DNA from: Heterodontus francisci
Lineage: Eukaryota
Assembly: GCF_036365525.1 (NCBI RefSeq)
Contig: NC_090390.1
Span: 40,707,993 to 40,771,992 of the forward strand
Direction: 5' to 3'
DNA: 64,000 nucleotides
Position numbers and translations under genes: made by a program. The stretch's first letter is position 1; each line of letters begins with the position of its first letter. A model generated the notes under the pieces. The model ran no database searches, had not been told where the DNA came from, and saw only the letters and a list, made by a program, of their open reading frames with translations. Shown one piece after another: positions 1 through 46,599 of this stretch.

Positions 1-2681
1 CTAACAGGTACCACACTGGAGGACGAAATAATGGGGGCTTGTGAGAAAGACATGGTGATAATCATGGGTGATTTTAATCTACAGATAGATTGGATGAATC
101 AGATTGGCAAAGGTAGTCTGGAAGGTGAGTTCATGGAGTATTTTCAGAACAGTTTCTTAGAGCAGCACGTTCTACAGCCAACCAGACAGCAGATTACTCT
201 AGATCTGGTAATGTGTAACGAGACAGGATTAATTAATGACCTCATAGTAAAGACTAAGTAGCAGTGATCACATCATGATTGAATTTTGCATTCCGTTTGA
301 GGGTGAGAAGAGTGGATCTAAGACTAGTGTTTTAAACTTAAATAAGGATAATTATGAGGGTATGAAGACAGAGATGGCTAAAGTAAACCGGGACGTCAGT
401 TGAAGGGATAGGTCAGTAGAGATGCAGTGGCAGACATTTAAGGAGATATTTCATAACACTCAGCAAAGCTACATTCCAGTGAGAAAGAAAGACTCCAGGG
501 GAAAGACACAACATCCATGCCTAACTAAGAAAGTTAAAGATAGTATCAAATTGAAAGAAAAGGGTACAATTCTGCGAAGAGTGGTGGCAGGTCAGAAGAT
601 TGGACAAAATATAAAAAAAGCAAAGAATTATCAAAAAAATAATGAGAGAGAAATTAGAGTATGACAGAAAGCTGGCTAGAAATATAAAAATGGATAGTAA
701 GAGTTTCTACAGGTATTTAAAAAGGAAAAGAGTAAGTAAAGTGAGTGTTAGTCCTCTAGAGATTGAGTCCTGGGAGTTAATAATGGAAAATAAGGAAATG
801 GCGGAGGAACTAAACATATTTTTTGCATCTGTCTTCACTGCAGGGACTGCAAATAACATCCCAGAAGTAATTGTGAATCAAGAGTTGAAAGGGAGGGAGG
901 AACTTAAACCAATTGCCATCACCAGGGAAAGGGTACTGAAAAAATTATTGGAATTAAAAACTAACAAGTTCCCAAGTCCTGATGGACTTTATCCTATGGT
1001 CTTAAAAGAAGTAGCTGGTGAGATAATCGATGCATTGGTTTTAATTTTCCAAAATTCCCTAGATTCTGGACAGGTCCCATCAGATTGGAAAATAACAAAT
1101 GAAATTCCGCTAAACAAGAAAGGAAGAAGACAGAATGTAGGAAATTACAGGTCAGTTAGCTTAATATCTGTCATAGGGAAAATGCTGGAATCTATTATTA
1201 CGGAGGTTATAGCAGGTCATTTAGAAAATCTCAATGCAATCACACAGAGTCAACATGGTTTTGTGAAAGGAAAATCGTGTTTGACAAATTTATTAGAGTT
1301 CTTTGAGGAAGTAACAAGCAATGCGGACAAAGGGGAACCTGTGGATGTGGTGTATTTGGATTTCCAGAAGGCTTTGACAAGGTGCCACATCAAAGATAAC
1401 TTAACAAAATAAGAGCCTATGGTATAGGGATAACATATTAGCATGGATAAAGAATTAGTTAGCTAACAGGAAACAGAGAGTAGGCAGAAATGGGTCATTT
1501 TCAGATTGGCAAGCTGTAACCAGTGGAGTGCCACAGGGATCAGTGCTGGGGCCTCAACTTTTTATAATCTATATCAATGACTTGGATGAAGGGACAGAAT
1601 GTATGATTGCTAAATTTGCTGATGACACAAAGATAGGTAGGAGAGTAAGTTGTGAAGAGGACATAAGGAGTCTGCAAAGGGATATAGATGGATTAAGTGA
1701 GTGGGCAAAGATTTGGCAGATGGAGTATAATGTAGGAAAGTGTCAACTTGTCCACTTTGGCTGGAAGAATAGAAAAGCAATATATTATTTAAATGGAGAG
1801 AGATTGCAGAACTCTGAGATCCAGAGGGATCTGGGTGTCCAAGGACACGAAATACAAAAAGTTAGTATGCAGGTAACAGCAAGTGATTAAGAAGGCAAAT
1901 GCAATGTTGTTGTTTATTGCAAGGGGAATGAAATATAAAAGTATAGATGTTTTGCTACAGTTGTATAGGGCATTGGTGAGACCACATCTAAAGTATTGTG
2001 TACAGTTTTGGTCTCCTTACTTAAGAAAGGATATAATTGCATTAGAAACAGTTCAGAGAAGGTTCACTCAACTGATTCCTGGGATGAAAGGGATATCTTA
2101 TGAGGAAAGGTTGGACAGGTTGGGTTTGTATTCATTGAAGTTTAGAAGGATGAGAGGTGGTCTTATTGAAACATTTCAGATCCTGAGGCGACTTGACAGG
2201 GTGGATGTTGAAAGGATTTTTCTCCTTGTGGGAGAGATTAAAACTAGGGGGCACAGTTTAAAAATAAGGAATCTCCCATTTAAGACAGAGATAAGGAGAA
2301 AGTTTTTTTCTCAGGGTCTTGAGTCTGTGGAACTCTCTTCCCCGGAGAGAGGTTGAGGCAGGGTCACTGAATGTTTTTAAGGCCGAGGTAGACATATTCT
2401 TGACAAACAAGGGAGTCAAAGGGTATCAGTGATAGGCAGGAAATTGTAACCATAGAGCCATAGAAAAATTATGGCACAAAAGGAGGTCATTCAGCCCATC
2501 GTGTCTGCGCCGGTTGAAAATACTAGCCGCCCAATCTAATCCTACCTTCCAGCACCTGGTCCATTGCCTTGCAGGTTACAGTACTTCACGTGCACAAACA
2601 GATTAGTTATGATCTTATAGAATGGCGGAGCAGGCTTGAGGGGCTGAATAGCTAACTCCTGCTCCTAGTTCGTATGTATGT
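1..2681 (+). mobile_element. CR1 LINE, ORF2 (APE endonuclease + reverse transcriptase) through 3' UTR, decayed; runs off window start
   Basis: Frameshifted ORFs carry IIMGDFN (APE), GNYRSVSL, QHGFVKGKSCLTNLLEFFEEV, PQGSVLGP, FADDTK and RPHLKYCVQFWSPY; CR1-type 3' tail near 2670. A short antisense CR1 3' tail is nested at ~2450-2595. Confidence 0.95.
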
Positions 2682-11645: not shown

Positions 11646-14600
11646 TGTTGAAAATGTGATTCCATTGCCTTGACCGGTCTGGAGGGGCTGTTCAGTACAT
11701 GCCACAGAGGGTGTCACAAATAATCGTTGTCTGCTGTGCCTTGCACGACCTTGCAATTAGACACGGCAACATTCTGCAGGCAGAGGAACAGGAGGAACAC
11801 CAGTCCTCCTCAGAAGAGGATGACTATAAAGAGGGTGAGGAGGAGGACAACAATGACAACAATGCCTTCATCGAAATGTGGGCCATGGAGGGACATGCAA
11901 GGGGCATCAGGGAGATACTCATTTATGCATATTTCAGGCAACAATAAGCCACGTCCTCAAGGAACATTGGGAGGAGAAACATAACAATTCCCCACAGAAA
12001 TTCCCTTTTGCATGAGGTCTTATTCATCCCTGCAATCTTAACGAAGTGTGGCTGCATGATTGGCATTTGAAATCATCTATGGGCTACAATGAATGCAACT
12101 ACACACCACCGTAAGCAGCGTTAAATTATGACCATAGAAAACAAACATAAGGCATGACAGTATTGGAAAAGGTTATTAATCATCAATAGGAGAACAGCCA
12201 TCATTGAAGAGTCAAGGCTCAAATTCCAATGAAATTTGGACACTGGACATTTCCTGAGATGCTCTGCAAGCATCATTACACTCCTTCCATAGGCCTCCAA
12301 AAAAATCTTTGTATCCATCTGTAACCAAGCAAAACATTACCGAAAGTGGATCAAATTTTGCATGAAATAGATATGTTTTAATACATGGTGTACATGGACT
12401 TTCAAAAGACTTTTGATACAGTGGCACACAACAGACTTGTGAGCAAACTTGTAGCTCATGGAATAAAAGAGACGGTAGCAACATGGATACGAAATTGGTT
12501 GAGTGACAGGAAACAAAATGTAGTGATTAATGGATGTTTTTTGGGCTGGGGGAAGGTTTGTAGTGGAGTTCCCCAGGGATCAATGTTGGACCCTTGCTTT
12601 TTCCGATATATATTAATGACCTAGACCTTGGTGTACAGGACATAATTTCAAAGTTTGCAGAAGATACAAAACTTGGAAGCATTGTGAACTGTGAGGAGGA
12701 TAGTGTAGAACTTCAAAAGGACATAGACAAGTTGATGGAATGGGCAGACAGGTGACAGATGAAGTTCAATGCAGAGAAATGTGAGGTGATTCATTTTGGT
12801 AGGAAGAACATGGAGAGACAATATAGAATAAAGGGCACAATTCTAAAGGGGGTGAAGGGGCAGAGGGACCTATGTGTATATGTACATAAGTCATTGAAGG
12901 TGGCTGGACAGGTTGACAGCACAGTTAATAAAGCATACAGTATCCTGGGCTTTATTAATAGGGGCATGGAGTACAAGAGCAAGGAAGTTTTGTTGAACTT
13001 GTATAAGATACTAATTTGGCCTCAGCTGGAGTATTGCGTCCAATTCTGGGCGCCGCACTTTAGGAAGGATGTGAGAGCATTGGAAAGAGTACAGAAAAGA
13101 TTCACGAGAATGGTTCCAGGGATGAGGAATTTCAATTATGAATATAGATTGGAGAAGTTAGGACTGTTTTCCTTGGAGAAGAGAAGGCTGAGAGGTGATT
13201 TGATAGAGGTATTCAAAATCATGAGGGGTCTGGACAGAGTAGATAGAGAAAAACTGTTCCCACTCGTGAAAGGATCGAGGCGAGAGGGCACAGATTTAAA
13301 GTATTTGGTAAGAGAAGCAAAAGTGACATGAGGAAAATCTTTTTCATACAGCGAGTGGTTAAGGTCTGGAATGCACTGCCTGAGAACGTGGTGGAGGGAG
13401 GGTCAATTGAAACATTCAAAAGGGAATTAGACTGTTATAGGAAAAGGAAGAATGTGCAGGGTTATGAGGAGAAGACAGGGGAATGGAACTGAGGGAACTG
13501 ATCTTTCAGAGAGCCAGTGCAGATACGATGGGCCGAATGGCCTCCTTCTGCACTGTAACGATGCTGTGATCTTTGCAATCATGACAATTTGTACAGCACG
13601 CGTGCCACTTTCATGATCAAAACAGTTTCAATTTCCTTTTTCTCCCACTATGTCTAGGTGCTACCCGACATTAGCAGCTATGGTGGAGGCAGTCTGCTCA
13701 GTGCGCTGCCCCATTGCAATGGATGACCGTGGCAGGCATCCTCTGGAGGAATGGGGACTTGATGGCTCCATCCTACTGGGGGTCTGCAGCAATGGTGCTT
13801 GAGTATCCCCCGTGTGCTCGCCTACTGGAGGTAAGGAGACCGATGTCAGGGGGGAGGCCGAGATGCCACTTACCTTGGCGCTACCCTGAGAGGAAGGCCC
13901 CGGGGTAGCTGGCATGTGCTCCTCCTCCATCTATGTGTACGGTGGCACCTGCCTGTCTCCCTGTGGGGAAGGAGCAACTGGAAGGAGATCCAGGTTCCTT
14001 GTACCCCTCTCACTTAGACTCTGTTGCATGGAGCCAACGGCAACAGCGATGGAGTGCAGGTCAGATTGCATATAGCTCGAGTGTGCTGCCAAACTCTCGA
14101 CTGAGGAAGCCATATGCTCAAATGCCTGGGACATGGCAGACATCATGGCTTGTATGGAATCCTCCATGGCACACATAAAGCCACGCATGACCTCAGGCAT
14201 CTCCGACACATTTTCCACATGGCTTTGCTGCACATCCAGCAGACTTCTCATAGCTACAAACATCATGTGCGTGAGGCTGAGCAGGAGTCTGGTCCCCAGC
14301 AGTCCTCCGATTGTCAGGGGTCCCAGCTGGCACATGCTCCCTCAGCTGCAGGGATGTGTCTGTGTCGTGCACAACAGCTTGTGACCCAGATTCTATTCTT
14401 AAACCCCCCGCGGACCATGTGGATGTATCTGCGCTGGCGGAGGTGTAAGAGTCAGGTGACAGTGTACCCGCTGGGGCATTGGCTTCTTCTTCCTCCCCAG
14501 AGGAGGATTCTTGGGCCACATGCCGTTCTGTGATTCGAGTGTGGGCACCTGCAGTGGGGACACAAACAGAGGCACTTTAAGCATGTGCTTCACATGAGTT

Positions 14601-19782: not shown

Positions 19783-22228
19783 CTGGTCTTACTCAGTTCC
19801 TATGGATATTCCTTGGGAATGTCACACCTGCTCTTGAGAATCCCTCACTGTGGCAGGGTCTATAATGGATGGTCAACCACTGCAGCCTGGTTTGTGCCCT
19901 GACAGAAGTTAAATTTCAACCTTTTTGTGTTTTACATATCTGCTGAACAATGTTTATCCCTGCTGAGATGATTAAACAATTGAGTCACTGCTATAAGGAT
20001 AAAACATAAATAGGAGAATTGTGTCTCTAAACTCACCTTCGCCCATTCCTGACAAAGATTTGACTTGGTCCTTTCCTCATATTGGGACAGCTGCTTTACC
20101 ATGGTTGGGCCATTGGCCCTCACTCTCTGATTATGTGCCTCCTTGGCTTTAAAGCACACAAAATTTCCAAAGATGTCTGCAACTTTCTATTTACCTCAAG
20201 CAGTCCCTTTCTGCCATCCACCTTCTTCTCTTCTACAAGGGCTTTGCAAATTGCTTTTTATTCTGTTTATGCTGGAAGTCCTTTTTAGGAGCAGTATCTT
20301 TGGTGCCCCATTAGAACTGTGTCCTACAGCTTTTGTGAAATCAGGGTCAAAGATCTCTGCATACTATTATCTTTCAGAGAAGGTAGCAGCTGAATATTTC
20401 AATTTGTTTTGTATTTTCTATGGCTGAGCAATACGCATGTTATACAAAAGTGAGAAATTTTACTTTGGCATTTTTGATGCCACTAAATGTTTTTGTTATA
20501 TTTACGCTGGATTGCTGGATATTTTGTATCTATCTGATTTTTCTCAGAACAATGCAGATATCACACTTGTATTAATTCACCAACTGGTTTATTTATAGAA
20601 TTTTAAAATATCTTAGCACCAACAAGGTTTCAGTACAATGTCTTCTCAGAACAATGACTGTTTATTGGAACATTCTAGTCCTGCTCTTTTAGTTTCAGTT
20701 TAAAACTCTTCAGCTCCACCCATAGGCTTAAGCAATCAAGCACAGTGAACACAGACCAGTGGACATACTAATACAATCAAACCCAGATCAATCAAACACT
20801 ACAGTTTTCCAAACTGCTTTAACTTTTTCCTACATTACAGCAGAGATTATAAGTTTGTGAAAGCAACAATATAAATGAAAATTCTTCCATTCTGTTATAT
20901 TGTAGCTGGCAAAATCTGCAAGCACCAACCTAAAAAATAGAATTTTGTTTAACCATTTATGTGCTGATTTTCTTTCAACATTTCCAACCTCTGCTGGTTT
21001 TTCATCAGGTGCAGAACTGATTTTGAAGCATTTCAAAGTTCAGAACATAAAAGTAGAATCACACAAATGCAAGAACTGTAACACTCTTTCTTTAGCATAT
21101 CATTTGATGAAACTAGAAGAAGTCATGGAATTATGTAATTTTTGAGCAAATCATATATTTTCAACCATTTTCTGCCCTTAAGCGAAGGAGTCCAGTGGAA
21201 CTTCCATGGACTTTCTGAGCCCTGGTGTTTACTGACAAATTATCAACTGAGCTTTGTTTTGTTGCTCCAAATATATTTAAAGTCACATTCAGTGATTCCC
21301 AAGCTTGACAGATATTCAAAGACACTTCTTTAATAATCTATTAATGGTGTACATGTTGAAGAATTTAAAGGTGTTGGTGGAATAATTCACAAAATGAGAG
21401 GAAAGGTAACCTTATCCATTTATACTGAGCACTGAAACTGAAAAATGAGTTCAACTGGTACAAGTCAGTTCCAGTTTTTGTGAGGTTGACTGAGGAGTAA
21501 TTTACTGAGTATAGTCTGGTGGCAGGAAATGCCACTGCTGTCAAAACACATCAGAAAATCTCAGGTGCCCAGCTCATGATCTGCTATCCTTTATTTTCAA
21601 AATACTATACTGGTTTATGTCCATTTTCATCGTAATTTTAGTACATACCTGTCAAAAAGTCTTGACAGTTGTCATGCAGGCCCCCACCTGCCAAGACTGA
21701 GGCAAAATTATTTTGCCACATGAACATTAAAACTTAAAATTGTGGCTGGGAAGAAAAGAGGGCCTATCACAAGGAATTGCCAAGCCCCTGACTGGAAAGA
21801 CATTTGCATGCTAAAAGACAGTGTTGGAACAAGGGACTCAGTCCTTGCTTCCCCAATGCACAGAAGAAGTGGTCAGACCAGTCTGTCACATGACTAACTG
21901 ACTGTTGGAGGTTTTTTTGAATTTGAACTTGCTGAGAGAAAGAACTCAGAAAGCTCTTTGCTCCTGGACTGAAAAGATCTCTCTCCTGTCTGCTCTCATC
22001 TCTTTCTCACGGAACTGAAGACCCATTGAAGACACATGAACACCAAGTGAGAAAAGTTTCCTACAGTGAAAAAGGTTTAAAAAGAATACTGGGCCCCAAC
22101 AAAAAGCAAGACTACTTACAAAGGGACTAAAGTGAGCTCAAAGCACAGAAACTCTTCTGGTTGCCTCAAACCTCTCTACTTTATTTTCTTCTGCTCTTTT
22201 CTGTCCCTATTTACATGTGTGTATCATG

Positions 22229-25200
22229 TTTTTTTTCATTCATTCAGGGATGTGGGTGAGGCTGGCTAGGCCAGCATTTATTGCTGATCCCTAATTGCCC
22301 TTGAGAAGGTGGTGGTGAGCTGCCTTCTTGAACTGCTGCAGTCCATTTGGGGTAGGTATACCCACAGTGCTGTTAGGAAGGGAGTTCCAGGATTTTGACC
22401 CAGCGACAGTGAAGGAATGGCGATATAGTTCCAAGTCAGGATGGTGTGTTACTTGGAGGGGAACTTGCAGGTGGTGATGTTCCCATGCATTTGCTGCCCT
22501 TGTCCTTCTAGGTGGTAGAGGTCGTGGGTTTGGAAGGTGCTGTCTAAGGAGCCTTGGTGCATTGCTGCAGTGCATCTTGTAGATGGTACACACTGCTGCC
22601 ACTGTGCATCGGTGGTGGAGGGAGTGAATGTTTGCAGATGGGGTGCCAATCAAGTGGGCTGCTTTGTCATGGATGGTGTCGAGCTCCTTGAGTGTTGTTG
22701 GAGCTGCACCCATCCAGAGTATTCCATCACACTCCTGACTTGTGCCTTGTAGATGGTGGACACGCTTTGGGGAGTCAGGAGGTGAGTTACTCACCGCAGG
22801 ATTCCTAGCCTCTGACCTGCTCTTGTAGCCACGGTATTTATATGGCTACTCCAGTTCAGTTTCTGGTCCATGGTAGCCCCTAGGATATTGATAGTGGGAG
22901 ATTCAGCGATGGTAATGCCGTTAAATGTCAAGGGGAGAAGGTTAGATTCTCTCTTGTTGGAGATGGTGGTTGCCTGGCACTTGTGTGGCGCGAATGTTAC
23001 TTGCCACTTATCAGCCCAAGCCTGGGCATTGTCCAGGTCTTGCTGCATTTCTACACAGACTGCTTCAGTATCTGAAGAGTCACGAATGGTGCTGAACATT
23101 GTGCAATCATCAGCGAATATCCCCACTTCTGACCTTATGATTGAAGGTAGGTCATTGATGAAGCAGCTGAACATGGTTGGGCCCAGGACACGACCCTGAG
23201 GAACTCCTACAGTGATGTCCTGGAGCTCAGATGATTGACCTCCAACAACCACAACCATCTTCCTTTGCGCTAGGTATGACTCCAGCCAGCGGAGGGTTTC
23301 CCCCCTGATTCCCATTGACTTCGGTTTTGCTAGGGCTCCTTGATGCCATACTCAGTCAAATGCTGCCTTGATGTCAAGGGCAGTCACTCTCACCTCACCT
23401 CTTGAGTTCAGCTCTTTTGTCCATGTTTGAACCAAGGCTGTAATGAGGTCAGGAGCTGAGTGACCCTGACAGATCCCAAACTGAGCGTCACTGAGCAGGT
23501 TATTGCTAAGCAAGTGCCGCTTGATGGCACTGTTGATGACACCTTCCATCACTTTACTGATGATTGAGAGTAGGCTGAAGGGGCGGTAATTGGCTGGGTT
23601 GGACTTGTCCTGCTTTTTGTGTGCAGGACATACCTGGGCAATTTTCCACATTGCAGGGTAGATGCCAGTGTTGTAGCTGTAATGGAACAGCTTGGCTCGG
23701 GGTGCGGAAAGTTCTGGAGCACAGGTCTTCAGTACTATTGCCGGAATATTGTCAGGGCCCATAGCTTTTGCAGTATCCAGTGCCTTCAGTCGTTTCTTGA
23801 TGTCACGCGGAGTGAATCGAATTGGCTGAAGTATGACATCTGTGATGTTGGGGACTTCAGGAGGAGGCCGAGATGGATCATGAACTCAGCACTTCTGGTT
23901 GAAGATTGTTGCAAATGCTTCTGCCTTATCTTTTGCACTGATGTGCTGGGCTCCCCCATCATTAAGGATGGGGATATTTGTGGAGCCACCTCCTCCAGTT
24001 AGTTGTTTAATTGTCCACAACTTCACGACTGGATGTGGTAGGACTGCAGAGCTTAGATCTGATCTGTTGGTTGTGGGATCCTTAACTCTGTCTATTGCAT
24101 GCTGCTTATGCAGTTTGGCATGCAAGTAGTCCTGTGCTGTAGCTTCACCAGGTTGACACCTCATTTTGAGGTATGCCTGGTGCTGCTCCTGGCATGCCCT
24201 CCTGCACTCTTTATTAAACCAGGGTTGGTCTCCTGGCTTGATGGTAATGGTAGAGTGGGGGATATGCCAGGCCATGAGGTTACAGATTGTGGTTGAGTAC
24301 AATTCTTCTGCTGCTGATGGCCCACAGTGTCTCATGGATGCCCAGTTTTGCATTGCTAGTTCTGTTCGAAATCTATCCCATTTAGCACAGTGGTAGTGCC
24401 ACACAATACGAAGGAGGGTATCCTCAATGTGAAGGCGGGACTTCTTCTCCACATGGACTGTGTGGTGGTCACTCCTACCAATACAGTCATGGACAGAAGC
24501 ATCTGTGGCAGGCAGATTGGTGAGGACCAGGTCAAGTATGTTTTTCCCTCGTGTTGGTTCCCTCACCACCTGCCGCAGACCCAGTCTAGCAGATATATCC
24601 TTTAGGACCCGGCCAGCTCGGTCAGTAGTGAAGCTACCAAGCCAGCCACTCTTGGTGATGGACATTGAAATCCCCACCCAGAGTACATTCTGTGCCCTTG
24701 CCACCCTCAGTGCTTCCTCCAAGTGGTGTTCAACATGGAGGAGTACTGAGTCATCAGCTGAGGGAGGGCGGTAGGTGGTAATCAGTAGGAGGTTACCTTG
24801 CCCATGTTTGACCTGATGCCATGAGACGTCGTGGGGTCCGGAGTCGATGTTGAGGACTCCCAGGGCAACTCCCTCCCTACTGTATACCACTGTGCCACCA
24901 CCTCTGGTGGGTCGACAGGGCTGCGTTTGCCGTTGTCGTTTCCGGTGCCTTGGTCGATGCCGGGTGGTCCATCCGGTTTCATTCCTTTTTATTGACTTCG
25001 TAGCGATTAGGTACAACTGAGTGGCTTGTGTTAGGCCATTTCAGAGGGTGTGTAAGAGTTAACCACATTTCTGTGCGTCTGGAGTCACATGTAGGCCAGA
25101 CCAGGTAAGGACAGCAGATTTCCTTCCCTAAAGGACATTAGTGAACCAGATGGGTTTTTACAACAATCGACAATGGTTTCATGGCCATCATTAGACTAGC

Positions 25201-25336
25201 TTTTAATTCCAGATTTATTAATTAAATTCAAATTCCACCTTCTGCTGTGGTGGGAATCGAACCCATGTCCCCAGAGAAATACCCTGGGTCTCTGGGTTAC
25301 TAGTCCAGTGATAATACCACTACGCCACTGCCTACC
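22229..25336 (-). mobile_element. single-ORF APE-RT LINE (CR1/L2/Jockey group, distinct from the other CR1s here) with tRNA-derived 5' head
   Basis: ORFs with TTYRPPS, PTRGKNILDLVLTN, SDHHTV (APE); GPDNIP, PANYRPFSLLS, ALDIKAAFD, GVPQGRVLGP, FADDCT (RT); 3' end GAATGAATGAAAAAAAA; 5' end has A and B boxes. A few stops and frameshifts. Confidence 0.92.
25245..25336 (-). promoter_or_regulatory. tRNA-type (type 2) RNA polymerase III internal promoter at the LINE 5' end
   Basis: Minus strand A box TGGCGTAGTGG (25327-25317) and B box GGTTCGATTCC (25263-25253), both matching consensus; the A box is ~10 nt from the element end. Confidence 0.8.
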
Positions 25337-25931
25337 TTGCTAGCGTGAGTGTGTCATATATCCATCGGCGTTAACCAAATTAGGGTTTAAGTTTAAGTTT
25401 TAATAAATTTCACTTTTCTTCTTTAAACCTAAGAAAACCTGGTGTGCTCATTTCTTTGCCTTATAATTGGAAAGTGGCGAACATGGATTTACAAAGGGGA
25501 GCTCAAGCCACTGTGTGTTTAAAATTAAAAATCCTGTTACAATAAAACCAGGTGAAGACAGTAAAAGACCCCTAGACATCTTTCTCACCTTGTCAGAACA
25601 CAGTGTATTGAAGCAAGTAAATAAATGTCTTCCTTTCCTCTGCAGTCCAGTAGCTATTACGTATCTAATCCCTGGCAAACCATAATTTACATGTACAGTC
25701 ACTGGTGGTCCAAGGGGAGGGTGAGAAACTCCAGCTGACTTGCAAGACTCTCTTGTCTGTGCTTTGCCTCCAGTTCTCGTGATTTCTCTTGATTTCAATT
25801 TTGATGTTTTAAAAATTGATCCTCAATTTGAGGACAACATTTTTAATCATTTGCTCATTTCTAATGTCAGTGGCTCCTTGGAGATATTCTATCAGACTGC
25901 AGCGTGAGACCAACTCCCTCCCTGGCACATT

Positions 25932-28325: not shown

Positions 28326-30194
28326 TTTATAAAGATAGGAACAAGTAGCAAAGTACATTAGTTTATCAGTGTTCTTTGCCACATAATACTGAAATGCAGT
28401 TTTGTTCTGTAATTCATCACTTGCTAAGTTCTGAATGTTAGCTGTGCCATCTGGGATGTGCCAAGCAGGGCAAAGATCTTCCACCAGAGATAGAGGAAAA
28501 ATTAGAAGGTGAATCACCTTGGATGACTCTCTTGAATTTCCCATTAACCAATCAATTAGTAGCGATCTGGCAAACTGCCCACAGAGTAGAATGTGACGTA
28601 TGAGAAACAAAAGTGGGTAAAAGTTAGTTCCAAAAATTTTTTCAATTTTTAATTTTTAAAATGCATTTATAACAAGAACATGGAGCCATAGAAGGTGCTG
28701 TAATATACTAAAGTGAGTAGCTAATGTGGGATGGCTCTTATCTATCTTCAGAACTGAGAATCTGTTTTAACAATCATTTAGTGGCTGGGAGAGACGGACA
28801 TTAAAACTTACAGAAAACCAGGAACTACATTAAAACTGGAACCTTTTTTTTAATCTAAGTTATCTGCCTCCCCTCTCGCTCTCAATAAAGGAGTGACTAT
28901 TTGTTAAACCTGATACTGCTATTAAAGTTTTGTTAATGAGCTTTCAGAGGAACATGTGGTTGTTTCCTACTAGGGGAAAATGACCAGATAGAAAGTGACT
29001 GGAGTTGGTTCAACAATGGAACAGCTAAATCCTTTGGCCCAGAACTGGACTTGGCTGCAATTTTTACAATAACTGGATCAGTGTAGTGCTGCCAACTCTG
29101 GAGATTCAGTCACATGACATTTAGTCACATGACAAACATTGCAGTCTGCAAATGTTACTACATTTATTTAATAGAACCATAGAACCATCGAAAATTTACG
29201 GCACAGAAGGAGGCCATTCAGCCCATCGTGTCTGCAGCAGCTGAAAAAACTAGCCACCCAATCTAATCCCACCCTCCAGCACCTGCTCCGTAGCCTTGCA
29301 GGTTACAGCACTTCAGGTGCATGTCCAGGTACCTTTTAAAAGAGTTGAGGGTTTTTGCCTCCACCACCAATCCAGGCAGTGAATTCCAGACACCCACTAC
29401 CCTCTAATATCCCCTCTAATCCTTCTACCAATCACCTTAAATCTGTGCCCCCAGTAATTGACCTCTCCGCTGAGGGAAACTGGTCCTTCCTGTGTACTCT
29501 ATCTACGCCCCTCATAATTTTTTACACCTCAATTAAGTCACTCCTTAGCCTCCCCTGTTCTAAGGAAAACAACCCTAACCGATCCAATCTTTCCTCATAG
29601 CTGCAACTTTCAAGCCCTGGCAACATTCTTGTAAATCTCCTCTGTACTCTCTCCAGAGCAATTATGTCCTTCCTGTAATGTGGTGACCAGAAATGTACGC
29701 AATACTCCAGCTGTGGCCTAATCAGCGTTTTATACAGTTCCAGCATTATATCCCTGCTTTTGTATTCTATAACTTGGCCAATAAAGGAAAGCATTCCATA
29801 TGCCTTCTTCACTGCTCTATTTACCTGTTCTGCTACCTTCAGGGACCTGCACTCCAAGGTCTCTCACTTATGCTACCCCTCTCAATATCCTCCCGTTTAT
29901 TGTGTATTCCCTTGCTTTGCTGTCTCTCCCCAAATGCATTACCTCACACTTCTCCTGATTGAATTCCATTTGTCACTTTTCTACCCACTCAACCAAACCA
30001 TTGATATCATTATGGAGTCTACGGCTATCCTCTTCACTATCAACTACATGGCCAATTTTTATGTCATCTGCAAATTTCCCAATCATGCCTCCCACTTTTA
30101 AGTCCAAATCATTTAAACAGCTAGGGACCCAACACTGAGCCCTGTGGAACACCACTGGAAACCACCTTCCATTCACAAAACATTCGTTGACCAT

Positions 30195-32714
30195 CGGCAG
30201 GTGGAAGGGGTGGCAGTGGGAGAGCATTTTGGTGGTAGCGATCACAATTCAGTCAATATTAACATAATTATGGAAAAGGACAGAGATAGAACAGGAGTTA
30301 AAGTTCTCAATTGGGGCAAGGCCAATTTTACTAAACTGAGGAGTGATTTAGTGAACGTGGACTGGAAATAATTACTTGAAGGTAAATCCGTGTCAGAACG
30401 GTGGGAGGCATTCAAAGGGAAGATTCAAGGGGTTCAGAGTAAACATGTTCCCACAAAGAAAAAGGGTGAGATGACCAAATCTAGAGCCCAATGGATGTCA
30501 AGGAGCCTAATGGGGAAGATAAGGCAGAAAAGGAAAGCTTATATCCGACACTGAGGACGCAATACTACAGAAAGTCGAGGGGAGTATAGAAAGTGGAGGG
30601 GTGAAATCAAAAAGGAAATTAGGAAAGCAAAGAGAGGGCATGAAAGAATATTGGCAAGCAAATTCCAGGTGAAGCCAAAGATGTTTTATCAATACATTAA
30701 GAGTAAGAGGATAACTAAGGAGAGAGTAGGGCCCATAAAAGACCAAAAAGGTAATCTATGTGTAGGGGCAGTAGATGATGGTATGGCTCTTAATGAATAC
30801 TTTGCGTCTGTCTTCACAAAAGAGGGGGACTATGCAGATATTGTAGTTAAGGAGGAGGAATGTGGAGTATTGGATGTGATAAAGATAGGGAGAGAGGAAG
30901 TATTAATGGGACTGGCATCCTTGAAAGTTGATAAATCACCAGGGCCAGAAGAAATGTACCCTAGGCTGTCAAAAGAAGCAAGAGAGGAAATAGCAGAAGG
31001 TCTGACCATCATTTTCCAGTCCTCACTGGTCATAGTTTTAGGATAAGGGGTAGCAGATTTAAAACAGAGATGAGGAGAAATTACTTCTCTCAAAGGGTCG
31101 TGAGTCTGTGGAATTCACTACCCCAGAGTGCGGTGAGGCCGGGCTGAGATCAGCCATGATCGTATTGAATGGCGGCGCAGGCTCGAGGGGCTGAATTGCC
31201 TACTCCTGCTCCTAGTTCTTAAGTTCTTATGTTTACTGGATACAGGTGTGGTACCGAAGGATTGGAGAACTGCTAACGTTGTACCTTTGCTTAAAAAGGG
31301 AGCGAAGGATAGACCGAATAATTACGGGTCAATCAGTCGAACCTCAGTAGTGGGCAAATTATTGGAATCTATTCTGAGAGGCAGGATAAACTGTCATTTA
31401 GAAAGGCACAGGTTAATCAAGGATAGTCTGCATGGATTTGTTAAGGGAAGATCTTGTTTGACCAACTTAATCAAATTTTTGAAGAAGTAACAAGGAAGAT
31501 AGATGAGGGTAGTGCAGTTGATATGGTCTACATGGATTCTAGCAAGGCTTTTGACAGGGACCGACATAGCAGCCTGGTTAAAAAAATGAAATCCCATGGG
31601 ATACAGGGAAATGCAGCAAGGTGAATGCAAAATTGGCTCAGTGGAAGGAAACAAAGGTACTTGTTGACAGGTGTTTTAGCAACTGGAGGGCTGTTTCCAG
31701 TGGCGTTTTGCAGGGCTCACTACTGTGTCCCCTGCTTTTTGTGGTATATATATTAATGATTTGGATGTGTAGGGGGCATGATCAAGAGGTTTGCAGATGA
31801 CACAAAGATTGGTCATGTGGTAGATAGCGAGGAGGATAGCTGTAGGTTGCAGGAAGATATTGATGGTCTGGTCAGATGGGCAGAAAAGTGGCAAATGGAA
31901 TTCAACCTGGAGAAGTGTGAGGTGATGCATCTGAGGAGGTCAAACAAGACAAAGAAATACACGATTAATGGGAAAATACTGAGAAGTGTAGAGGAAGTGA
32001 GGGACCTTGGAGTCAATGTCCACAGATCCCTGAAGATAGCAGGACAGGTCGATAAGGTGGTTAAGAAGGCATATGGAATCCTTTCCTTTATTAGTCGATG
32101 TATAGAATATAAGAACAGGGAGGTTATGCTGGAACAGTATAACTCATTGGTTAGGCCACAACTTGAGTACTGTGTGCAGTTCTGGTCACCTCATTACAGA
32201 AATGATGTGATTGCACTAGAGAGGGTACAGAGGAGATTTACAAGGATGTTGCCAGGACTGGAAAAATGCAGCTATGAGGAAAGATTGGATAGACTGGGGT
32301 TGTTCTCCTTGGAACAGAGAAAGCTGAGGGGCGATCTGATTGAAATGTACAACATTTTGAGGGGCCTGGATAGAGTGGAGGTGAAGGGTCTAGTCACCTT
32401 AGCAGAGAGGTCAGTGATGAGGGGGCATAGATTAAAGTGATTGATAGAAAAATTAGAGGGGAGATGATGAAAATCTTTTTCACCCAGAGGGTGGTGGGGG
32501 TGTGGAACTCACTGCCTGAAAGGGCAGTTGAGGCAGAAACCCTCAACTCAATCAAAAGGAGTCTGGATATGCACCTCAAGTGCCATAATCTGCAGGACTA
32601 CAGACCAAATACTGGAAGGTAGGATTAGAATAGGTGGTTCATTTCTCGACTGGCACAGACATGATGGGCCCAGTGGCTCTTTCTGTGCCTTAAACATTCT
32701 ATGATTCTATGATT
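30195..32714 (+). mobile_element. 5'-truncated CR1 LINE nested antisense in the preceding CR1
   Basis: GGSDHNSV, DKSPGPEEMYPR, FADDTK and a 220-aa RT C-terminal ORF (31778-32440); (ATTCTATG)n tail at ~32696-32714. Confidence 0.95.
31030..31233 (+). mobile_element. CR1 3' fragment nested in the nested CR1
   Basis: CR1 3' UTR with GTTCTTA-type tail; ACTGG duplicated on both flanks; host frame FQSSL..DTGVVPKDW resumes afterwards. Confidence 0.85.
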
Positions 32715-41101: not shown

Positions 41102-41479
41102 GTTACAGAAGTGTAAAGTTAATCTTCAATAGAATTCACTCATTATGAATTTGACAGAGGAAAAAGGGAATTTTCATGTAAAATTTGATGATTTTTTAAA
41201 GCATATTGTTACAACGAGGTGAGAAAGGTCTTTTACTGTCTTTACCTGGTCTTATTGTAACAGGATTTAATTTTAAACACACCATATTTTTAGCTCCCCC
41301 TTGGTGAATCCTTGTTCACCACTTTCCAATTGTAAGGCAAAGAAATGAGCATAAACAGGCTTTCTTAGGTTTAAAGAAGAAAAATGAAATTTATTAAAAC
41401 TTAAACTCTAATATGGTTAACGCCTACAGATATACGATGCATCCACGCTATCATGAAAATAGGGACAGAAAAGAAGAAA

Positions 41480-41485
41480 AATAAA
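41480..41485 (+). promoter_or_regulatory. candidate polyadenylation signal for DNTT inside the antisense LTR
   Basis: First AATAAA after the stop codon (ATTAAA also at 41393); T/GT-rich sequence ~35-55 nt downstream. Use is unverified. Confidence 0.35.
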
Positions 41486-44400
41486 GTAGCAACGTTTGAG
41501 GCAATATCAGAAGAATTTCTTGTTTACTGTGCTTTGAGCTCACTGTAGTTCTTTTGTAAGTAGTCTTGCTTTTCGTTGGGGCCCAGTATTATTAAACCTT
41601 GTTCACTGTAGGAGACTTTACTGTCTTGGGGTTCACATGTCTTCAATGGGTCTTCAGTTCCGTTAGAAAGAGATGGGAGCAGACAGGAGAGAGATCTTTT
41701 CAGTCCAGGTGCAAAGAGCTTTCTGAGTTCTTTCTCCCAGCAAGTTCAAATTCAAAAAACTCCAACAGTCAGTTAGCCATGTGACTAAACTGGTCTGACC
41801 ACTTCTTCTGTGTATTGGGGAAGCAAGGACAGGGTCCCTTGTTCCAACACTGTCTGCTAGCATGCAAATGTCTTTCCAGTCAGGGGCTTGGCAATTCCTT
41901 GTGATAGGCCCTCTTTTCTTCCCAGCCACAATTTTAAGTTTTAATGTTCATGTGGCAAAATAATTTGTGCCTCAGTCTTGGCAGGCAGGGGCTTGCATGA
42001 AACCTCCACACTCAGGGGAATGAAATGCAATTTGAAAAAAAATAGCGCATTTCATTACAAGGTTTGAGAGAAATGTAAGATATAGAAAGAAAAACCATGC
42101 ATTTATCTTATTCATTTCCATTCATTCATCAAGCTTAAAGCTTATTAGAATAGTCTTTTCTGGGCGCCAGTGCTGCTTTAATTTCCCCCTTTTGTTTTAG
42201 GAGAGTGGCAGGTCTATCCTGAACTCTCTGAGTAATGCAAAGGCTTTTGATTTCAGGGGTAGGCTGGTTCCCTTTTCCTCTGACTTGGGGGAGGACTTTT
42301 TTATTAATCTCCCCTTTGTTCTCTGGGACACTCCTAACTGCAGGTATTTGTGTAGACTTGACTGCATTCTCCTGTGGCACTTCAACTAGGTGGGGCATCC
42401 CTTCATGGTTTCTGTGCCCCCTAGAGGTCTCTCTTTGTCTCTGCAGGTTCCTGTAAATGCTGTTAGCAACTCTGATGGGGTGCTTCTAGAGTCTGCCTTT
42501 ATTAAGGAGGATGTGGGGTTGGCTGACCATACAGTAGGGGTTTGCATCCGGGATTCCTCCCGGACTTCCTTTAACCTGCCCCCTTGGTTACCTTTTCCCC
42601 TTCTCTTTCTAAACTTTTGCCAGCCTTCTGCCTGCCTGTTCCCTTGTGTTCTCGGCGGGGGTCCCTTACAGTTTACCAGCTCTCTGCTGGAGGGTCCTCC
42701 TAACACCGGTACAGGACTTAGGGGTGAAGGTTTCACTGTAGGTTGGGGTTTCCCCGCAACCTGGCACATGTGGCAACTCTTGCAGTACTCCACCACATCT
42801 TTGTGGAGTTTTGGCCAGTCAACCTGCTGTCTTATGTGGGCTTTGATCTTTCATATACCGGCATGTACAGTCACTGTAGTCTTGTGGGCCCTTCTTAATA
42901 TTTCTCCCCGGTACCTCTGTGGCAACACTAACTGGTGAACTACTGTCCACTCCTTGCCCTCAGGTCTGTGAGGAGAACTCCATTTCCTCATCAGTACCTC
43001 ATTCTTTAAATAGTAGCAGTCAGGGATTCCCTCTGCTTCACTTTCAGACTGGGCAGTGTGTGCTAACTCTCACAATACTGGTTTGGCTCGCTGAGCCTCA
43101 CCGAGGGAAAATCAATTTAATTCATTCCCTGGGTCTCCTAACTTTCCAAAGAAAGTCTCAGACAGACAGACCTCCTGGTCATCTGCCTGCAGTGCCAATG
43201 CAGTCTCCTCTGGGGGAGCTGGTTTGATCATGGCCTGATCCATTACACATTCAGGGAAATTGCAGGGAATTTCCTGCAGTCTTTCTTTCACTAATGGAGG
43301 GGGGTGGCGCTACCATCTTCACCCCCGCCAGATCCTTACCTAGGAGCAGGTCAACCCTGTTCACAGACAAACTAGGGACAATCCCTACGGTCACTGTTCC
43401 CAAAACTAGACTGCCCTCCAATACCATTCACCACCATTTTGGTGTTCACCTCACTCTCTGGGGGAAAGGTCAGGCCTTTTCCCAGTAAAAGGGATCTAAT
43501 CACCCCTGTGTCCCTGAGAATCACTATGGGCTTGCTTGCCCCAGTCGAGCGGTATGGGGTTATTTTCCCTTCAGACACGAAACCCTGATAACCTTCAGGA
43601 ATCCTATTAACTTTTCCTGCACTGGCTGTAGTAAGCTTCCTAGTTTACACTCTTACTGCAGTTAAAGCCACAGCTTATTCTGTGTTTTCAGGGTCCTGTC
43701 TTCACTGAGCGGGTATACCCTGATTAACCCTAGCAGTTTTCCCTTTAGTTTCCAGCAGTCAGCTTTTAAATGCCCTGCTTTATTACAATGGAAGCACGCA
43801 GGTCTCCAGGTCTCACTCTTGCTCACAACACCTTCCCTTTTGGTTGGAGGAGGGCCCCCTGTGTCTCCTGCTTTCCTTTCTCTTCCAGGACTGCCTGGGC
43901 TTCTATCACCTTCCCATCCTTTGTCCCTTTCAGATTTGTAAAGGTGATTAGGAAAGGTTCTCCCCTGGGAAACCGACTTATATAAATTAAAGCAAACTCA
44001 TCGGCCAGAACAGCTGCTTGCTGGGCTCCCTAAACCCGCTGCTCCTCTACATGGGTCTTTCTGGAGAGTGGAAGAGAGTTTTTAAACTCCTCTAGCAGGA
44101 TTACTTCTCTGAGATTCTCATAGCTGAGCTTTACTTTAAGAGCCCTCAGTCACTGGCCAAAAGCCAGCTGCTTACTTCTTTCACACTCCAGATAAGTTTG
44201 ATTAGCTTCCTTTTTGAGGGTTCTAAACTTTTGGTGATAGGCTTCGGGTACTAATTCATATGCCCCGAGGATAGCATTTTTGGTCAGTTCATAATTTGAT
44301 GAACTGTCATCTGGCAACAAGGAATAAACCTCATGGGCTTTTCTGCTTAGTTTGCTTTGCAATAAGAGAGACCATTTTAGCTGCCTTGCCAGTTTCTCAA

Positions 44401-45192
44401 AAGACACAAAAAATACTTCCACATCTTCCTCATTGAAGTTTGCAATTAATCGAGCAAGTTTTAGCAATTTTGTACCCAGCCCTGAATTTTGCTCCTTCAC
44501 ATTGGCCATGCTTTCACTGGAGTTACTCTGTCAACCCCTAGCTAACTCAAGCTGCTTCAGTTCGTTCTTTCTTTGGATTCTTTCTGGAATATTCTTTCTC
44601 TCTCTCTCCTGCCTTTCATTCTCTTCACGTTCCTTTTGCAAGGCTCACTCTTTCTCCCTCTCCTGCCTCTCTCTTTTTCCTGTCTCTCGTTTTCTTTTTC
44701 CTCTAATTCAAGATTCCTTTGTTCCAATTGTAACTTTTCTAGCAGTACCCTTTCTGGGTCTGCTTCTAACACTGCTTCTGCATCTTCAGATTCAAGGGAA
44801 AAATGGTTGGCCACCAGCCTTAGGAGCTCAGACGTCCTAGCCTTGTCACGTATAGTGATCCCACACTGCTCAGCCATTTTTCTCAGCTCTTCCATAGACA
44901 TTGCTTTTAACTTATCCCAAGTTACTTCACCCTGGCTTGGAGAGCTACACGCTTCATTTGCAGACATGTTAGTATTGAATAACACATAACTAAAAGAAAA
45001 CCTGTATTAATATTGCTCTTTTTTTGATTGGGATCAATTTGGCTTCCCACTTCAATTTCTCTTGTTTGTCTGTGGGTAAAATCGGGAATGTTAGCAGCCA
45101 AATTCCTGTTACAACCACGTGAGAAAGCTGTCCAGGGGTCTTTTACTGTCTTCACCTGGTCTTATTGTTATGGGATTTAATTTTAAACACAC

Positions 45193-45930
45193 AGGCCGAA
45201 ATTTTCCTCCACCCCAGCGAGCCAGATGGCGCCAGGGGGGGCGTAAAATTGAGCTGGATGCTCTGGGATGCCTTCCCGACCCGCTCCTGCCTCCACCCCA
45301 CTTTACAAAGGACGAGGGGGAGTGAAAAACGGTCCGGCCACCCCAGGCCAATCAAGGCCCCTAAATGGCCACTTAACGGCCACTTAAGTGCTTTCGCCCT
45401 CCTCCACGGGGATTTTACCTGTGGCAAACAGGCATCCTAGAGCCGGGAAAGACCGCCCAATGAGAGTTGTCGGCCTCTCCGTGACCTGGGGAGTGGGGGC
45501 CCTGATAAACGGGCACAAGGTGCCCGATTGAGAGCACCCCACTTCCCCAACCACCCCCAGGATCCAAGACGCCCCCCTTCCCCCCAAATGACCACCCATG
45601 CCTCGCTGGGGCCCAAGCAATTACCCCGGCGAGGCAATCCAAACTTACCTGCAGTCCTGGCTCCATGTCCTCAGCTGGGCTGCAGTCCCAGCAGTGGCCA
45701 CCACTACCTGTGGCGCGGGCTGTGACTAAGAGCTGCCGGCCTGATGATTGGCTGGTAGTTCATTGAGACGAGACTTCCTCCCTCAAGTGGGTGGAAGTCC
45801 CGCCTCGGAATAGTTAAATCCCGAGGACCCGTAAAATGCGGGATGGATCCCCGGGCTAGGCAGAAGCGGGTTCACCACCAACTTTTATGTCGATGGCCAG
45901 CTCCCATCCACCCGACGTAAAATCCAGCCC
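45193..45930. mobile_element. Harbinger-type MITE inserted into the 5' LTR of the Gypsy element
   Basis: AGGCCGAAATTTT ... GTAAAATCCAGCCC; LTR sequence is contiguous on either side when compared with the other LTR copies. Confidence 0.88.
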
Positions 45931-46599
45931 ACTGTGTTTTGAGCTCCCCCTTGGCGAATCCTTGTTCACCACTTTCCAATTATACGGCAAGGAAATGAGC
46001 ATAACAGGATTTCTTAGGTTTAAAGAAGAAAAGTGAAATTTATTAAAACTTAAATTTAAACTCTAATATGGTTAATGCCTACAGATATACGACGCGCCCA
46101 CGCTAGCATGCACACACAATACACACATACAAATAGAGACAGAAAAGAGCAGAAGAAAAATAAAGTAGAGAAGTTTGAGGCAATATGAAAATAGTTTCTT
46201 GTTTACTGTGCTTTGAGCTCACTGTAGTCCTTTTGTAAGTAGTCTTGCTTTTCGTTGGGGCTCAGTATTCTTCTTAAACCTTGTTCACTGTAGGAGACTT
46301 TTCTCTCTTGGGGTTCATGTGTCTTCAATGGGTCTTCAGTTCCGTGAGAAAGAGATGGGAGAGACAGGAGAGAGGACTATTCAGTCCAGGTACAAAGAGC
46401 TTTCTGAGATCATGACAACATTGATTTGTAAATAGGCAAGTGCAACTTTAGTTGTCACCACTGAGATTGGGAAGTATAAATACAGGTGTCCAGCAGTAGA
46501 AAAATGATACTACATAAACTGCAAATTAAACTATTTTGTGGAAAAGGATCTTAATTTACTGAACTCTTCAACATTGCATTGTGAAACTGATTAAGACTT

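What the first reader, a model, noticed from the sequence alone, without database searches (positions are those of the whole stretch)
22229..25336. Candidate RNA polymerase III-transcribed, protein-coding LINE: tRNA head, single ORF, and no oligo-T terminator in 3.1 kb
Seen in sequence: (1) the whole unit occupies one insertion point in a solo LTR whose halves rejoin. (2) Its 5' end is a tRNA-type head with consensus A box (TGGCGTAGTGG) and B box (GGTTCGATTCC), continuing with no tail or TSD into a ~230-nt leader and then an APE-RT ORF. (3) There is no ORF1. (4) The frame opens without AUG (track start is TTG at 25016) with a basic stretch RHRPRHRKRQRQ. (5) Scanning every line by hand I found no AAAA on the + strand from 22229 to 25336, so no TTTT on the element's sense strand, while sense-strand AAAA runs occur about a dozen times and the ordinary CR1s here have many sense TTTT runs. 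A rough eyeball estimate (about 21-22% T) would predict several runs by chance. Established: vertebrate Pol III terminates at four or more T, A/B boxes drive SINE transcription, and LINEs normally use Pol II. Inference: this family may be an autonomous SINE-headed LINE transcribed by Pol III, purged of terminators and translated cap-independently through the leader. This copy is decayed and seems to lack the first APE motifs. I cannot confirm whether the family has already been described.
Basis: partly seen in the sequence, partly recalled or inferred. Interest (0 to 1): 0.92.

Follow-up and report, generated by a model that had tools for sequence, protein, structure and literature searches.

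The report
Shark LINE with a SINE head
This is a dead copy of a shark jumping gene (a LINE) whose front end is the tRNA-like head and body of its own partner SINE; the layout recurs in other sharks, so the LINE may be copied by RNA polymerase III, but that is not shown.

Summary
The anatomy is real. One 3,109-base unit (window 25337-22229, minus strand) sits at a single point in a repeat whose halves rejoin. It has a tRNA-like head with exact A and B boxes, about 225 nt of SINE-type body, one APE/RT reading frame, no ORF1, AATAAA and an A-tail.

The sense strand has no TTTT. That is only marginally unusual: 2.1-2.8 runs expected, P(0) = 0.04-0.10.

One claim fails. The "AUG-less" frame with RHRPRHRKRQRQ is an artefact of a roughly 183-nt deletion in this copy. 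The family ORF starts at ATG 24982 (MKPDG...), shown by a shark gene model, probably whale shark.

The head-ORF link is not private to this copy. A horn shark protein model reads through the same SINE-body/LINE junction, and contigs from three organisms bridge it. First readers of this scan also noted at least seven similar 3.2-3.3 kb copies on other DNA of this genome; I could not check those.

The LINE fits the ORF1-less, poly(A)-tailed Zenon type of the CR1 group. The partner SINE equals the LINE minus its ORF.

Pol III transcription is plausible (about 0.4) but untested.

The parts
22229..25337 (-). Whole retroposed unit (3,109 nt): SINE head and body, LINE ORF, tail and A-run
   Evidence: Empty-site comparison with two other copies of the host repeat; sequence
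25242..25332 (-). tRNA-derived head (tRNA-Thr(AGT)-like, 91 nt)
   Evidence: ARAGORN; the fold z-score of -1.9 is not significant on its own
25317..25327 (-). A box TGGCGTAGTGG, starting 10 nt from the unit's 5' end
   Evidence: Sequence; pattern unique in the window
25253..25263 (-). B box GGTTCGATTCC
   Evidence: 1 match, 0 expected by chance
25015..25241 (-). SINE-type body shared with the partner SINE (probably a Deu-type domain; not tested)
   Evidence: Depth rises at 25044-25271, and the SINE-form joint links 22304 to about 25017-25053 in three runs
24983..25014 (-). LINE-specific end of the 5' UTR; the SINE/LINE junction lies at 25014-25016
   Evidence: Point where the SINE form leaves the LINE; the same junction is read through by Heterodontus P0007
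24980..24982 (-). ATG, start of the family ORF (MKPDGPPGID...)
   Evidence: In P0171 this frame runs into the APE N-terminus; P0171 overlaps P0025
24908..24914 (-). Site of a copy-specific deletion of about 183 nt that removed the first APE motifs and shifted the frame
   Evidence: Loose-end consensus at 24913; the missing residues are present in P0025 and P0171
24456..24788 (-). Remaining APE endonuclease domain
   Evidence: Pfam Exo_endo_phos_2, E = 2.9e-4, below the curated cutoff; 74% identity to the P0007 APE part
22875..23609 (-). Reverse transcriptase domain, split by a stop codon
   Evidence: Pfam RVT_1, 37 and 54.6 bits, above the cutoff
23886..23888 (-). In-frame TGA stop; the same kind of stop also lies at 23352-23354 and 22791-22793
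   Evidence: ORF list and frame arithmetic; P0001 and P0003 have R at the first site
22291..22293 (-). TAG, natural end of the ORF
22229..22304 (-). 3' tail shared with the SINE, with AATAAA at 22277-22282 and an A8 run at 22229-22236
   Evidence: Joint at 22304; sequence
21672..22228 (.). One half of the host repeat of about 0.8 kb (the other half is 25338-25570); 'CA' is duplicated at both edges

Best explanation
This is a decayed copy of an elasmobranch LINE lineage of the Zenon type (CR1 group). Such elements have one APE-RT ORF of about 955 codons, no ORF1, a short 3' UTR with AATAAA and a poly(A) tail, and are about 3.3 kb when complete. In this lineage the 5' UTR is the tRNA-derived head plus body of its own partner SINE.

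Shown:
- The unit entered its site in one event.
- The SINE-body/LINE junction recurs in other shark species.
- The abundant SINE is the same element with everything between 25015 and 22305 missing, like the Persaeus/Zenon pair of moths.
- The ORF starts at an ordinary AUG.

Inferred:
- Headed copies descend from headed masters (about 0.7).
- To regenerate a 5' end that starts 10 nt before the A box in every cycle, the full-length template RNA is most simply made by RNA polymerase III from the A/B boxes, reading 3.3 kb that holds no T4 terminator (about 0.4 overall).
- Whether that RNA is also the mRNA, or the protein comes from Pol II transcripts and acts in trans through the shared tail, is open.
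For: - Single insertion with a clean empty site.
- Head with exact A and B boxes.
- APE and RT domains, no ORF1.
- The horn shark gene model P0007 translates colinearly the SINE-body 3' part, the junction, the LINE 5' region and then APE (Expect(2) = 8e-8 and 2e-42).
- Contigs carrying the majority letter G at 25006, which this copy lacks, extend 33-79 nt into the SINE body in four runs from three organisms. Organism B has almost no depth on the flanking repeat, so those contigs are not orthologues of this insertion.
- The SINE-form joint links 22304 to about 25017.
- AUG start.
- No T4: P(0) = 0.04-0.10. None of the 37 listed majority letters creates one.
- Phe content is 1.6-2.0%, against a mean of 3.9% in 34 full-length relatives.
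- The Zenon traits (no ORF1, poly(A) tail, presence in elasmobranchs, about 3.3 kb) match PMC13343379 and PMC6740152.
- As a lead only: first-reader notes of at least seven other headed copies of 3.2-3.3 kb in this genome.
Against: - No census of full-length copies was possible. Depth just inside the body (25029) is about 40% of depth just inside the LINE (25006) in run X1, so many headless copies are not excluded.
- T4 absence is marginal and was noticed after the fact.
- AATAAA plus an A-tail and an AUG in good context look like a Pol II mRNA.
- No LINE is known to use Pol III, and natural Pol III RNAs are rarely longer than 0.5 kb (own knowledge).
- There are 12 T3 runs that could act as weak terminators.
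- All available runs were contigs, so no RNA start, strand or level could be read.
- Zenon membership was not tested by phylogeny.
Confidence: 0.42

Rival explanations
1. Same family-level architecture, but the SINE-derived region is only a captured 5' UTR. The LINE is transcribed by Pol II from an internal or nearby promoter, capped, polyadenylated at AATAAA and translated from AUG 24982. The lack of T4 is chance plus T-poor composition.
For: AATAAA lies 40 nt before the A-tail. The AUG start has a purine at -3. T4 absence has P(0) of 0.04-0.10 by chance. The nearest relative P0018 is also Phe-poor at 2.3%. All studied LINEs use Pol II, or Pol I read-through (own knowledge; Kojima 2018, PMC5786205).
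Against: Eight upstream AUGs in the 355-nt leader would block scanning from a cap at the head. No Pol II element is known that would start exactly at a tRNA-like +1. The A and B boxes are still perfect in a copy whose ORF is badly decayed.
Confidence: 0.28
2. Headed copies are made afresh each time. The reverse transcriptase finishes a headless LINE RNA, then switches at a short homology (CAGTT/TCAAG) onto partner SINE RNA held in the same particle. That gives a reproducible junction without any headed master.
For: The SINE and LINE share 'CAGTT' and 'TCAAG' motifs at the relevant joints. Template-switch chimeras are well known for L1 (bioRxiv 10.1101/2025.02.02.635956). Headless copies are not excluded.
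Against: The junction appears identical in register over 21 codons in a distant shark. There is no SINE tail or A-run at the junction, which end-to-end jumping would leave. Several near-equal-length headed copies are reported in this genome (unchecked).
Confidence: 0.17
3. One-off event at this locus: a lone template-switch chimera, or a SINE that landed exactly at the 5' end of a truncated LINE.
For: There is only one copy in the 64-kb window.
Against: The same junction occurs in Heterodontus P0007 and in contigs of three organisms. There is one clean empty site with a single 2-bp duplication.
Confidence: 0.03

Closest known systems
Zenon LINEs (CR1 group) and their internally deleted derivative Persaeus in Lepidoptera (PMC6740152; vertebrate Zenon in PMC13343379)
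   Same: Single APE-RT ORF, no ORF1, poly(A) tail and about 3.3 kb full length. Both have an abundant short derivative made of the LINE's 5' and 3' ends. Zenon is reported in elasmobranchs.
   Different: Persaeus and moth Zenon have no tRNA homology and no Pol III promoter (PMC6740152). Here the shared 5' part is a tRNA-derived head with A/B boxes plus a SINE body. PMC13343379 never mentions tRNA.
SacSINE1/LmeSINE1, tRNA-headed Deu-domain SINEs of sharks, chimaera and coelacanth (PMC5499810)
   Same: tRNA-like head with A/B boxes, a conserved body, a tail shared with a partner LINE, and very high copy number in cartilaginous fish.
   Different: Those are elements of about 0.4 kb that encode no protein. 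This unit carries a 2.7-kb APE/RT frame between body and tail. Sequence identity with SacSINE1 could not be tested (no Repbase or Dfam access).
Bov-tA / Bov-B and other bipartite LINE-derived SINEs (Okada and Hamada 1997, as reviewed in PMC5786205)
   Same: The SINE is a tRNA head plus the 5' and 3' parts of a LINE, and the model of head addition and internal deletion is the same.
   Different: In those cases the autonomous LINE itself is headless. The review found such contributions only from RTE and Vingi, and states that SINEs cannot encode a protein.
U6/L1 and other small-RNA/LINE template-switch chimeras (bioRxiv 10.1101/2025.02.02.635956)
   Same: A Pol III-type small RNA sequence is fused 5' to LINE sequence within one insertion.
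   Different: Those are sporadic, with variable LINE break points and the small RNA's natural 3' end at the joint. Here the joint is fixed, lies inside the SINE, and recurs across species.
R2 elements co-transcribed with rRNA by Pol I (own knowledge; mentioned in PMC5786205)
   Same: They are a precedent for a LINE whose template RNA is not an ordinary capped Pol II transcript.
   Different: R2 depends on its target gene's promoter and a self-cleaving ribozyme. Here a portable internal Pol III promoter is proposed, and it is unproven.

Membership tests
Non-LTR retrotransposon (LINE) | APE endonuclease plus reverse transcriptase in one frame | tested here: met
   RVT_1 scores 37 and 54.6 bits, above the cutoff. 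Exo_endo_phos_2 scores 21.1 bits, below the cutoff in this deleted copy. HMMER finds 388 relatives at E <= 1e-10, including 962-983 aa proteins.
Zenon (CR1 group) | No ORF1 | tested here: met
   Only 355 nt lie before the ATG, with no ORF longer than 29 aa.
Zenon (CR1 group) | Poly(A) tail, said to be unique among CR1-group elements (PMC13343379) | tested here: met
   An A8 run ends the unit at the insertion edge, preceded by AATAAA.
Zenon (CR1 group) | RT domain groups with named Zenon elements in a tree | not testable with these tools
   No labelled Zenon, CR1 or L2 references were available. The only named distant relative is from a moth (P0033), which is weakly consistent.
tRNA-derived SINE (SINE2) | tRNA-derived head with A and B boxes at the 5' terminus | tested here: met
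   The 5' edge was fixed by the empty sites.
tRNA-derived SINE (SINE2) | Short and encodes no protein | tested here: not met
   The unit is 3.1 kb with APE/RT coding sequence.
Sporadic template-switch chimera (U6/L1 type) | Junction private to one insertion, variable between insertions | tested here: not met
   The same junction is seen in P0007 of Heterodontus and in contigs of three organisms.
Pol III type-2 transcription unit | A and B boxes at workable spacing, with the transcript start just upstream | tested here: met
   The A box lies at +11, there are 53 nt between the boxes, and the unit starts 10 nt before the A box.
Pol III type-2 transcription unit | No T4+ run before the intended 3' end | tested here: met
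   No sense T4+ in 3,108 nt. The first T5 lies 124 nt into the 3' flank, at 22101-22105. Chance probability is 0.04-0.10.
Pol III type-2 transcription unit | Actual Pol III occupancy, or 5'-triphosphate transcripts | not testable with these tools
   All runs offered were contigs, not reads.

The most novel reading that the evidence does not exclude
Elasmobranch Zenon-type LINEs are autonomous retrotransposons whose full-length, protein-coding RNA is made by RNA polymerase III from the tRNA-derived internal promoter in their own 5' UTR. They are kept free of T4 terminators. The hugely abundant tRNA-headed SINE of sharks is simply their internal-deletion derivative. If so, a conserved SINE body (Deu-type) would be a LINE 5' UTR or the reverse, and a Pol III transcript would serve as an mRNA in vertebrates.
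Probability: 0.25. Interest if true: 0.92.

Novelty: new variant of a known kind. Interest (0 to 1): 0.72.

Why it matters
LINEs are thought to rely on Pol II (or host Pol I units) and SINEs on Pol III. SINEs are described as heads added to LINE fragments that "cannot encode a protein" (PMC5786205).

A propagating LINE that carries the complete SINE head and body at its 5' end blurs that line:
- It gives a concrete intermediate for how a SINE and its partner LINE arise from one another.
- It offers a lead on the unexplained origin of conserved SINE bodies.
- It makes the idea of a Pol III-made LINE RNA directly testable in sharks, where CR1-group elements fill 22-34% of the genome (PMC13343379).

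If Pol II turns out to drive it, it is still an undescribed case of a LINE adopting its parasite's sequence as its 5' UTR.

Tried and rejected
No shark DNA around P0001, P0007, P0025, P0171 or P0018 could be fetched, so a census of 5' ends was impossible.
- **DNA and protein scans for family copies found nothing.** This covers viral contigs, JGI metagenomes and prokaryote genomes. The family fragments looked up come from NCBI, eukprot and ENA; none of them is from JGI.
- **A second metagenome scan with distant relatives was uninformative.** It returned three loci at 26-28% identity with no tRNA-like head. Scans with P0018 found nothing.
- **Two protein searches for more junction-spanning models gave little.** The P0007 region search returned only P0007 itself. 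The 66-aa ATG-frame ORF returned P0171, which settled the start codon but does not reach upstream of the ATG.
- **Rfam gave only sub-threshold noise**: mir-33, snoU83B and tmRNA on the head.
- **The search of earlier findings by sequence was blank**.
- **Depth ratios of the "RNA?" runs were not used as expression evidence**, because all runs were contigs.
- **Rejected: the basic N-terminal stretch as a real feature.** It is a frame artefact.
- **Rejected: a one-off chimera.**
- **Not tested:** whether the body is a Deu domain and whether the SINE is SacSINE1. I recall the resemblance only from memory, so it is a lead.
Full report
**What is there**

Read on the minus strand, window 25337-22229 is one retroposed unit of 3,109 nt.

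With the unit removed, its two flanks align as a single 803-bp stretch (87% identity) to another copy of the same repeat at 42000-41227. They also align to a third copy at 46411-45930. At base level only 'CA' is duplicated at the edges. So the head, leader, ORF and tail arrived together. No other copy of any part of the unit is present in the 64-kb window.

**The parts**

- **Head.** ARAGORN finds a 91-nt tRNA-Thr(AGT)-like gene at 25242-25332(-). The A box TGGCGTAGTGG (25327-25317) and the B box GGTTCGATTCC (25263-25253) match the textbook consensus. The pair is unique in the window, with none expected in 100 shuffles. The unit begins 10 nt before the A box.
- **Body.** About 225 nt of body follow the head.
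- **ORF.** The coding region gives Pfam hits to Exo_endo_phos_2 and RVT_1.
- **3' end.** The frame ends at TAG 22293-22291. It is followed by a 3' UTR of about 55 nt with AATAAA (22282-22277) and an A8 run.
- **No ORF1**.

This copy is dead:
- It has three in-frame TGA stops at positions where relatives have arginine.
- It has small frameshifting indels.
- It has an internal deletion at about 24913. The missing sequence is shown by the loose-end consensus of other copies and by the protein fragments P0025 and P0171.
- From those fragments the deletion is about 61 codons (roughly 183 nt). That would make a complete element about 3.29 kb.

**The start codon**

- A shark gene model from eukprot, probably whale shark (P0171; its source species was not looked up), begins MKPDGLPGIDLGT.... 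It continues in the same frame into VTNIWGLVPKPGELPHRLVKQ...SYLTDNVPDT, the N-terminal APE motif.
- That motif overlaps P0025 at 73% identity. It also matches the LLTNxxGL...GEL motif of distant full-length relatives.
- In the window the same peptide (MKPDGPPGIDQGT...) starts at ATG 24982 but lies in another frame than the downstream APE. The deletion shifted the frame and by chance fused the basic-looking frame to APE.

The family ORF therefore starts with an ordinary AUG (G at -3), 32-35 nt past the SINE/LINE junction. The 355-nt 5' UTR does contain eight upstream AUGs.

**TTTT**

- The sense strand has 0 T4+ runs, 14 A4+ runs and 12 T3 runs. T content is 21%.
- Dinucleotide shuffles give a mean of 2.1 with P(0) = 0.10. 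Mononucleotide shuffles give 4.7 with P(0) = 0.006.
- Shuffling synonymous codons within the four ORF pieces gives 2.8 with P(0) = 0.04.
- Ten other LINE fragments of at least 250 nt in the window carry 0-8 sense T4+ per kb (nine have 1.6-8.1; a 259-nt piece has none). All have more T (22-26%) and more A.
- Applying the 37 best-supported majority letters of other copies one position at a time creates no T4.
- The family is poor in Phe: 2.0% here and 1.6% in fragments from other sharks, against a mean of 3.9% (range 2.2-7.1%) in 34 full-length relatives.

The absence is real and suggestive. On one ancestral sequence it is only marginally significant, and it was noticed after the fact.

**Is the head-ORF link private to this copy? 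No.**

(a) *Contig evidence.* Contigs of four runs from three organisms were laid on the unit.
- The family is enormous, with about 750,000 contig pieces in one run. Depth falls toward the 5' end, as is typical of LINEs.
- At 25006, ten bases inside the LINE-specific part, about 99% of the depth in X1 (74-99% across the four runs) carries G, where this copy has A. These contigs are therefore other copies.
- The best such contigs lie 72, 59, 89 and 43 letters from an end, so they run 33-79 nt into the SINE body.
- Organism B has almost no depth on the flanking host repeat (1.6 and 27). Its bridging contigs therefore cannot be orthologues of this insertion.

(b) *Protein evidence.* P0007 is a 379-aa predicted protein of the horn shark Heterodontus francisci. 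tblastn places it colinearly on the unit:
- residues 223-239 lie on window 25089-25036 (SINE body);
- residues 242-290 lie on 25027-24872, straight across the junction, with KPLS|FINLLKRLRKGTKPDGP against KPLS|CT*SLRSQ*KGMKPDGP in the same register over 21 codons;
- residues 276-374 lie on the APE region at 74% identity.
- The scores are Expect(2) = 8e-8 and 2e-42.

(c) *Other notes in this scan.* First-stage readers noted at least seven other pieces of this genome with a tRNA-headed, ORF1-less LINE of 3.2-3.3 kb without TTTT. They also noted SINEs that equal it minus the ORF. I could not read those pieces, so they are leads, not support.

**The SINE partner**

A joint seen in three runs links 22304 to about 25017-25053, with diverged body letters in between. 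The abundant SINE is thus head plus body joined to the last 76 nt of the LINE. The two joints share short motifs (CAGTT, TCAAG).

**What kind of LINE**

- Protein hits at 60-78% identity come from Heptranchias, Heterodontus, Cetorhinus, Pristiophorus and Rhincodon.
- Full-length relatives reach only 30-35% identity, are 962-983 aa long and sit on contigs of 3.6-3.8 kb.
- The absence of ORF1, the poly(A) tail and the size of about 3.3 kb are the traits given for Zenon elements.
- A 2026 survey reports Zenon in elasmobranchs, coelacanth and hagfish, and says the elasmobranch ones are in no repeat library. Its text never mentions tRNA (PMC13343379).
- Moth Zenon elements are 3.27-3.37 kb in most species listed (up to 3.74 kb) and spawn Persaeus, a short element made of their 5' and 3' ends. 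Persaeus explicitly lacks tRNA homology and a Pol III promoter (PMC6740152).
- Shark and coelacanth tRNA-headed Deu SINEs (SacSINE1, LmeSINE1) are described only as elements of about 0.4 kb (PMC5499810).
- Kojima's survey found LINE 5' parts in SINE bodies only for RTE and Vingi (PMC5786205).
- Phrase searches for SINE-LINE chimeras or tRNA-headed LINEs found nothing relevant.

I did not test Zenon membership by phylogeny, or SINE identity against Repbase or Dfam.

**How it most likely works**

Shown:
- a one-piece insertion;
- a fixed SINE-body/LINE junction across species;
- a SINE that is the LINE without its ORF;
- an AUG-initiated single ORF.

Inferred:
- Headed copies derive from headed masters (about 0.7). 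A family can keep such a 5' end only if transcription restarts at it in each generation. The one recognisable internal promoter is the Pol III A/B-box pair, and the same head presumably drives the SINE.
- A 3.3-kb body without T4 would let Pol III reach the A-tail. The first T5 lies 124 nt into the flank.
- I put Pol III synthesis of the template RNA at about 0.4 overall, and the stronger claim that this RNA is also the mRNA at about 0.25.
- The main rival (0.28) is Pol II transcription with the SINE part as a captured UTR. AATAAA, the A-tail and the good AUG favour it. The eight upstream AUGs and the intact boxes count against it.
- Recurrent homology-guided template switching onto SINE RNA (0.17) is not excluded, because headless full-length copies could not be counted.
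- A one-off chimera (0.03) is contradicted.

**Limits**

- The public collections that could be scanned hold no copy of the family.
- All sequencing runs were contigs.
- There is therefore no census of 5' ends, no family-wide T4 count and no RNA-end evidence.

**Verdict**

The architecture is a family trait that appears undescribed in the searchable literature. The Pol III idea is a reasonable, testable inference rather than a finding. The scan has flagged the same architecture before on other DNA of this genome.

Noticed in passing
window 21672-22228 + 25338-25570; 41227-42000; 45930-46411 (and 45119-45194): The host of the insertion is a repeat of about 0.8 kb with three copies in the window, 85-87% alike. 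Run X5 (organism B) shows almost no depth on it, so this repeat family seems absent there although the LINE family is abundant. Whether it is an LTR was not tested.
   Followed up: partly
window 645-2062(+), 12325-13432(+), 30177-32428(+), 57227-58742(-) and smaller pieces: Other CR1-like LINE fragments, richer in A+T (A 30-37%), carry 1.6-8 sense-strand T4+ runs per kb. They served only as a composition-unmatched control.
   Followed up: partly
P0007, P0003, P0093, P0013, P0014 (shark gene models): Several annotated shark proteins contain translated pieces of this LINE: an Ig V-set protein, an aldo-keto reductase-like protein, a CWC25 homolog, a MyoD-inhibitor-domain protein and a chitobiase-like protein. 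These are likely exonised or mis-annotated repeats.
   Followed up: partly
window 24983-25337(-): The 355-nt SINE-derived 5' UTR holds eight upstream AUGs with short uORFs of 1-29 codons. This is awkward for cap-dependent scanning whichever polymerase makes the RNA.
   Followed up: partly
family ORF (window pieces and P0001...P0171): Phe content is 1.6-2.0%, at or below the minimum of 34 full-length relatives (mean 3.9%). The nearest relative P0018 is also low at 2.3%.
   Followed up: partly
literature (PMC13343379, PMC5499810, PMC5786205): The three vertebrate lineages reported to hold Zenon LINEs (elasmobranchs, coelacanth, hagfish) are also lineages with tRNA-headed Deu-type SINEs (SacSINE1, LmeSINE1, EbuSINE). 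This is a co-distribution worth testing for a shared 5' module.
   Followed up: no
P0018 cluster (P0018, P0163, P0165 and others): The closest full-length relative (35% identity, 983 aa) occurs as identical-length ORFs on several ENA contigs of 3.6-3.8 kb. That looks like a young, possibly active element in an unidentified organism. Its 5' end could not be fetched.
   Followed up: no
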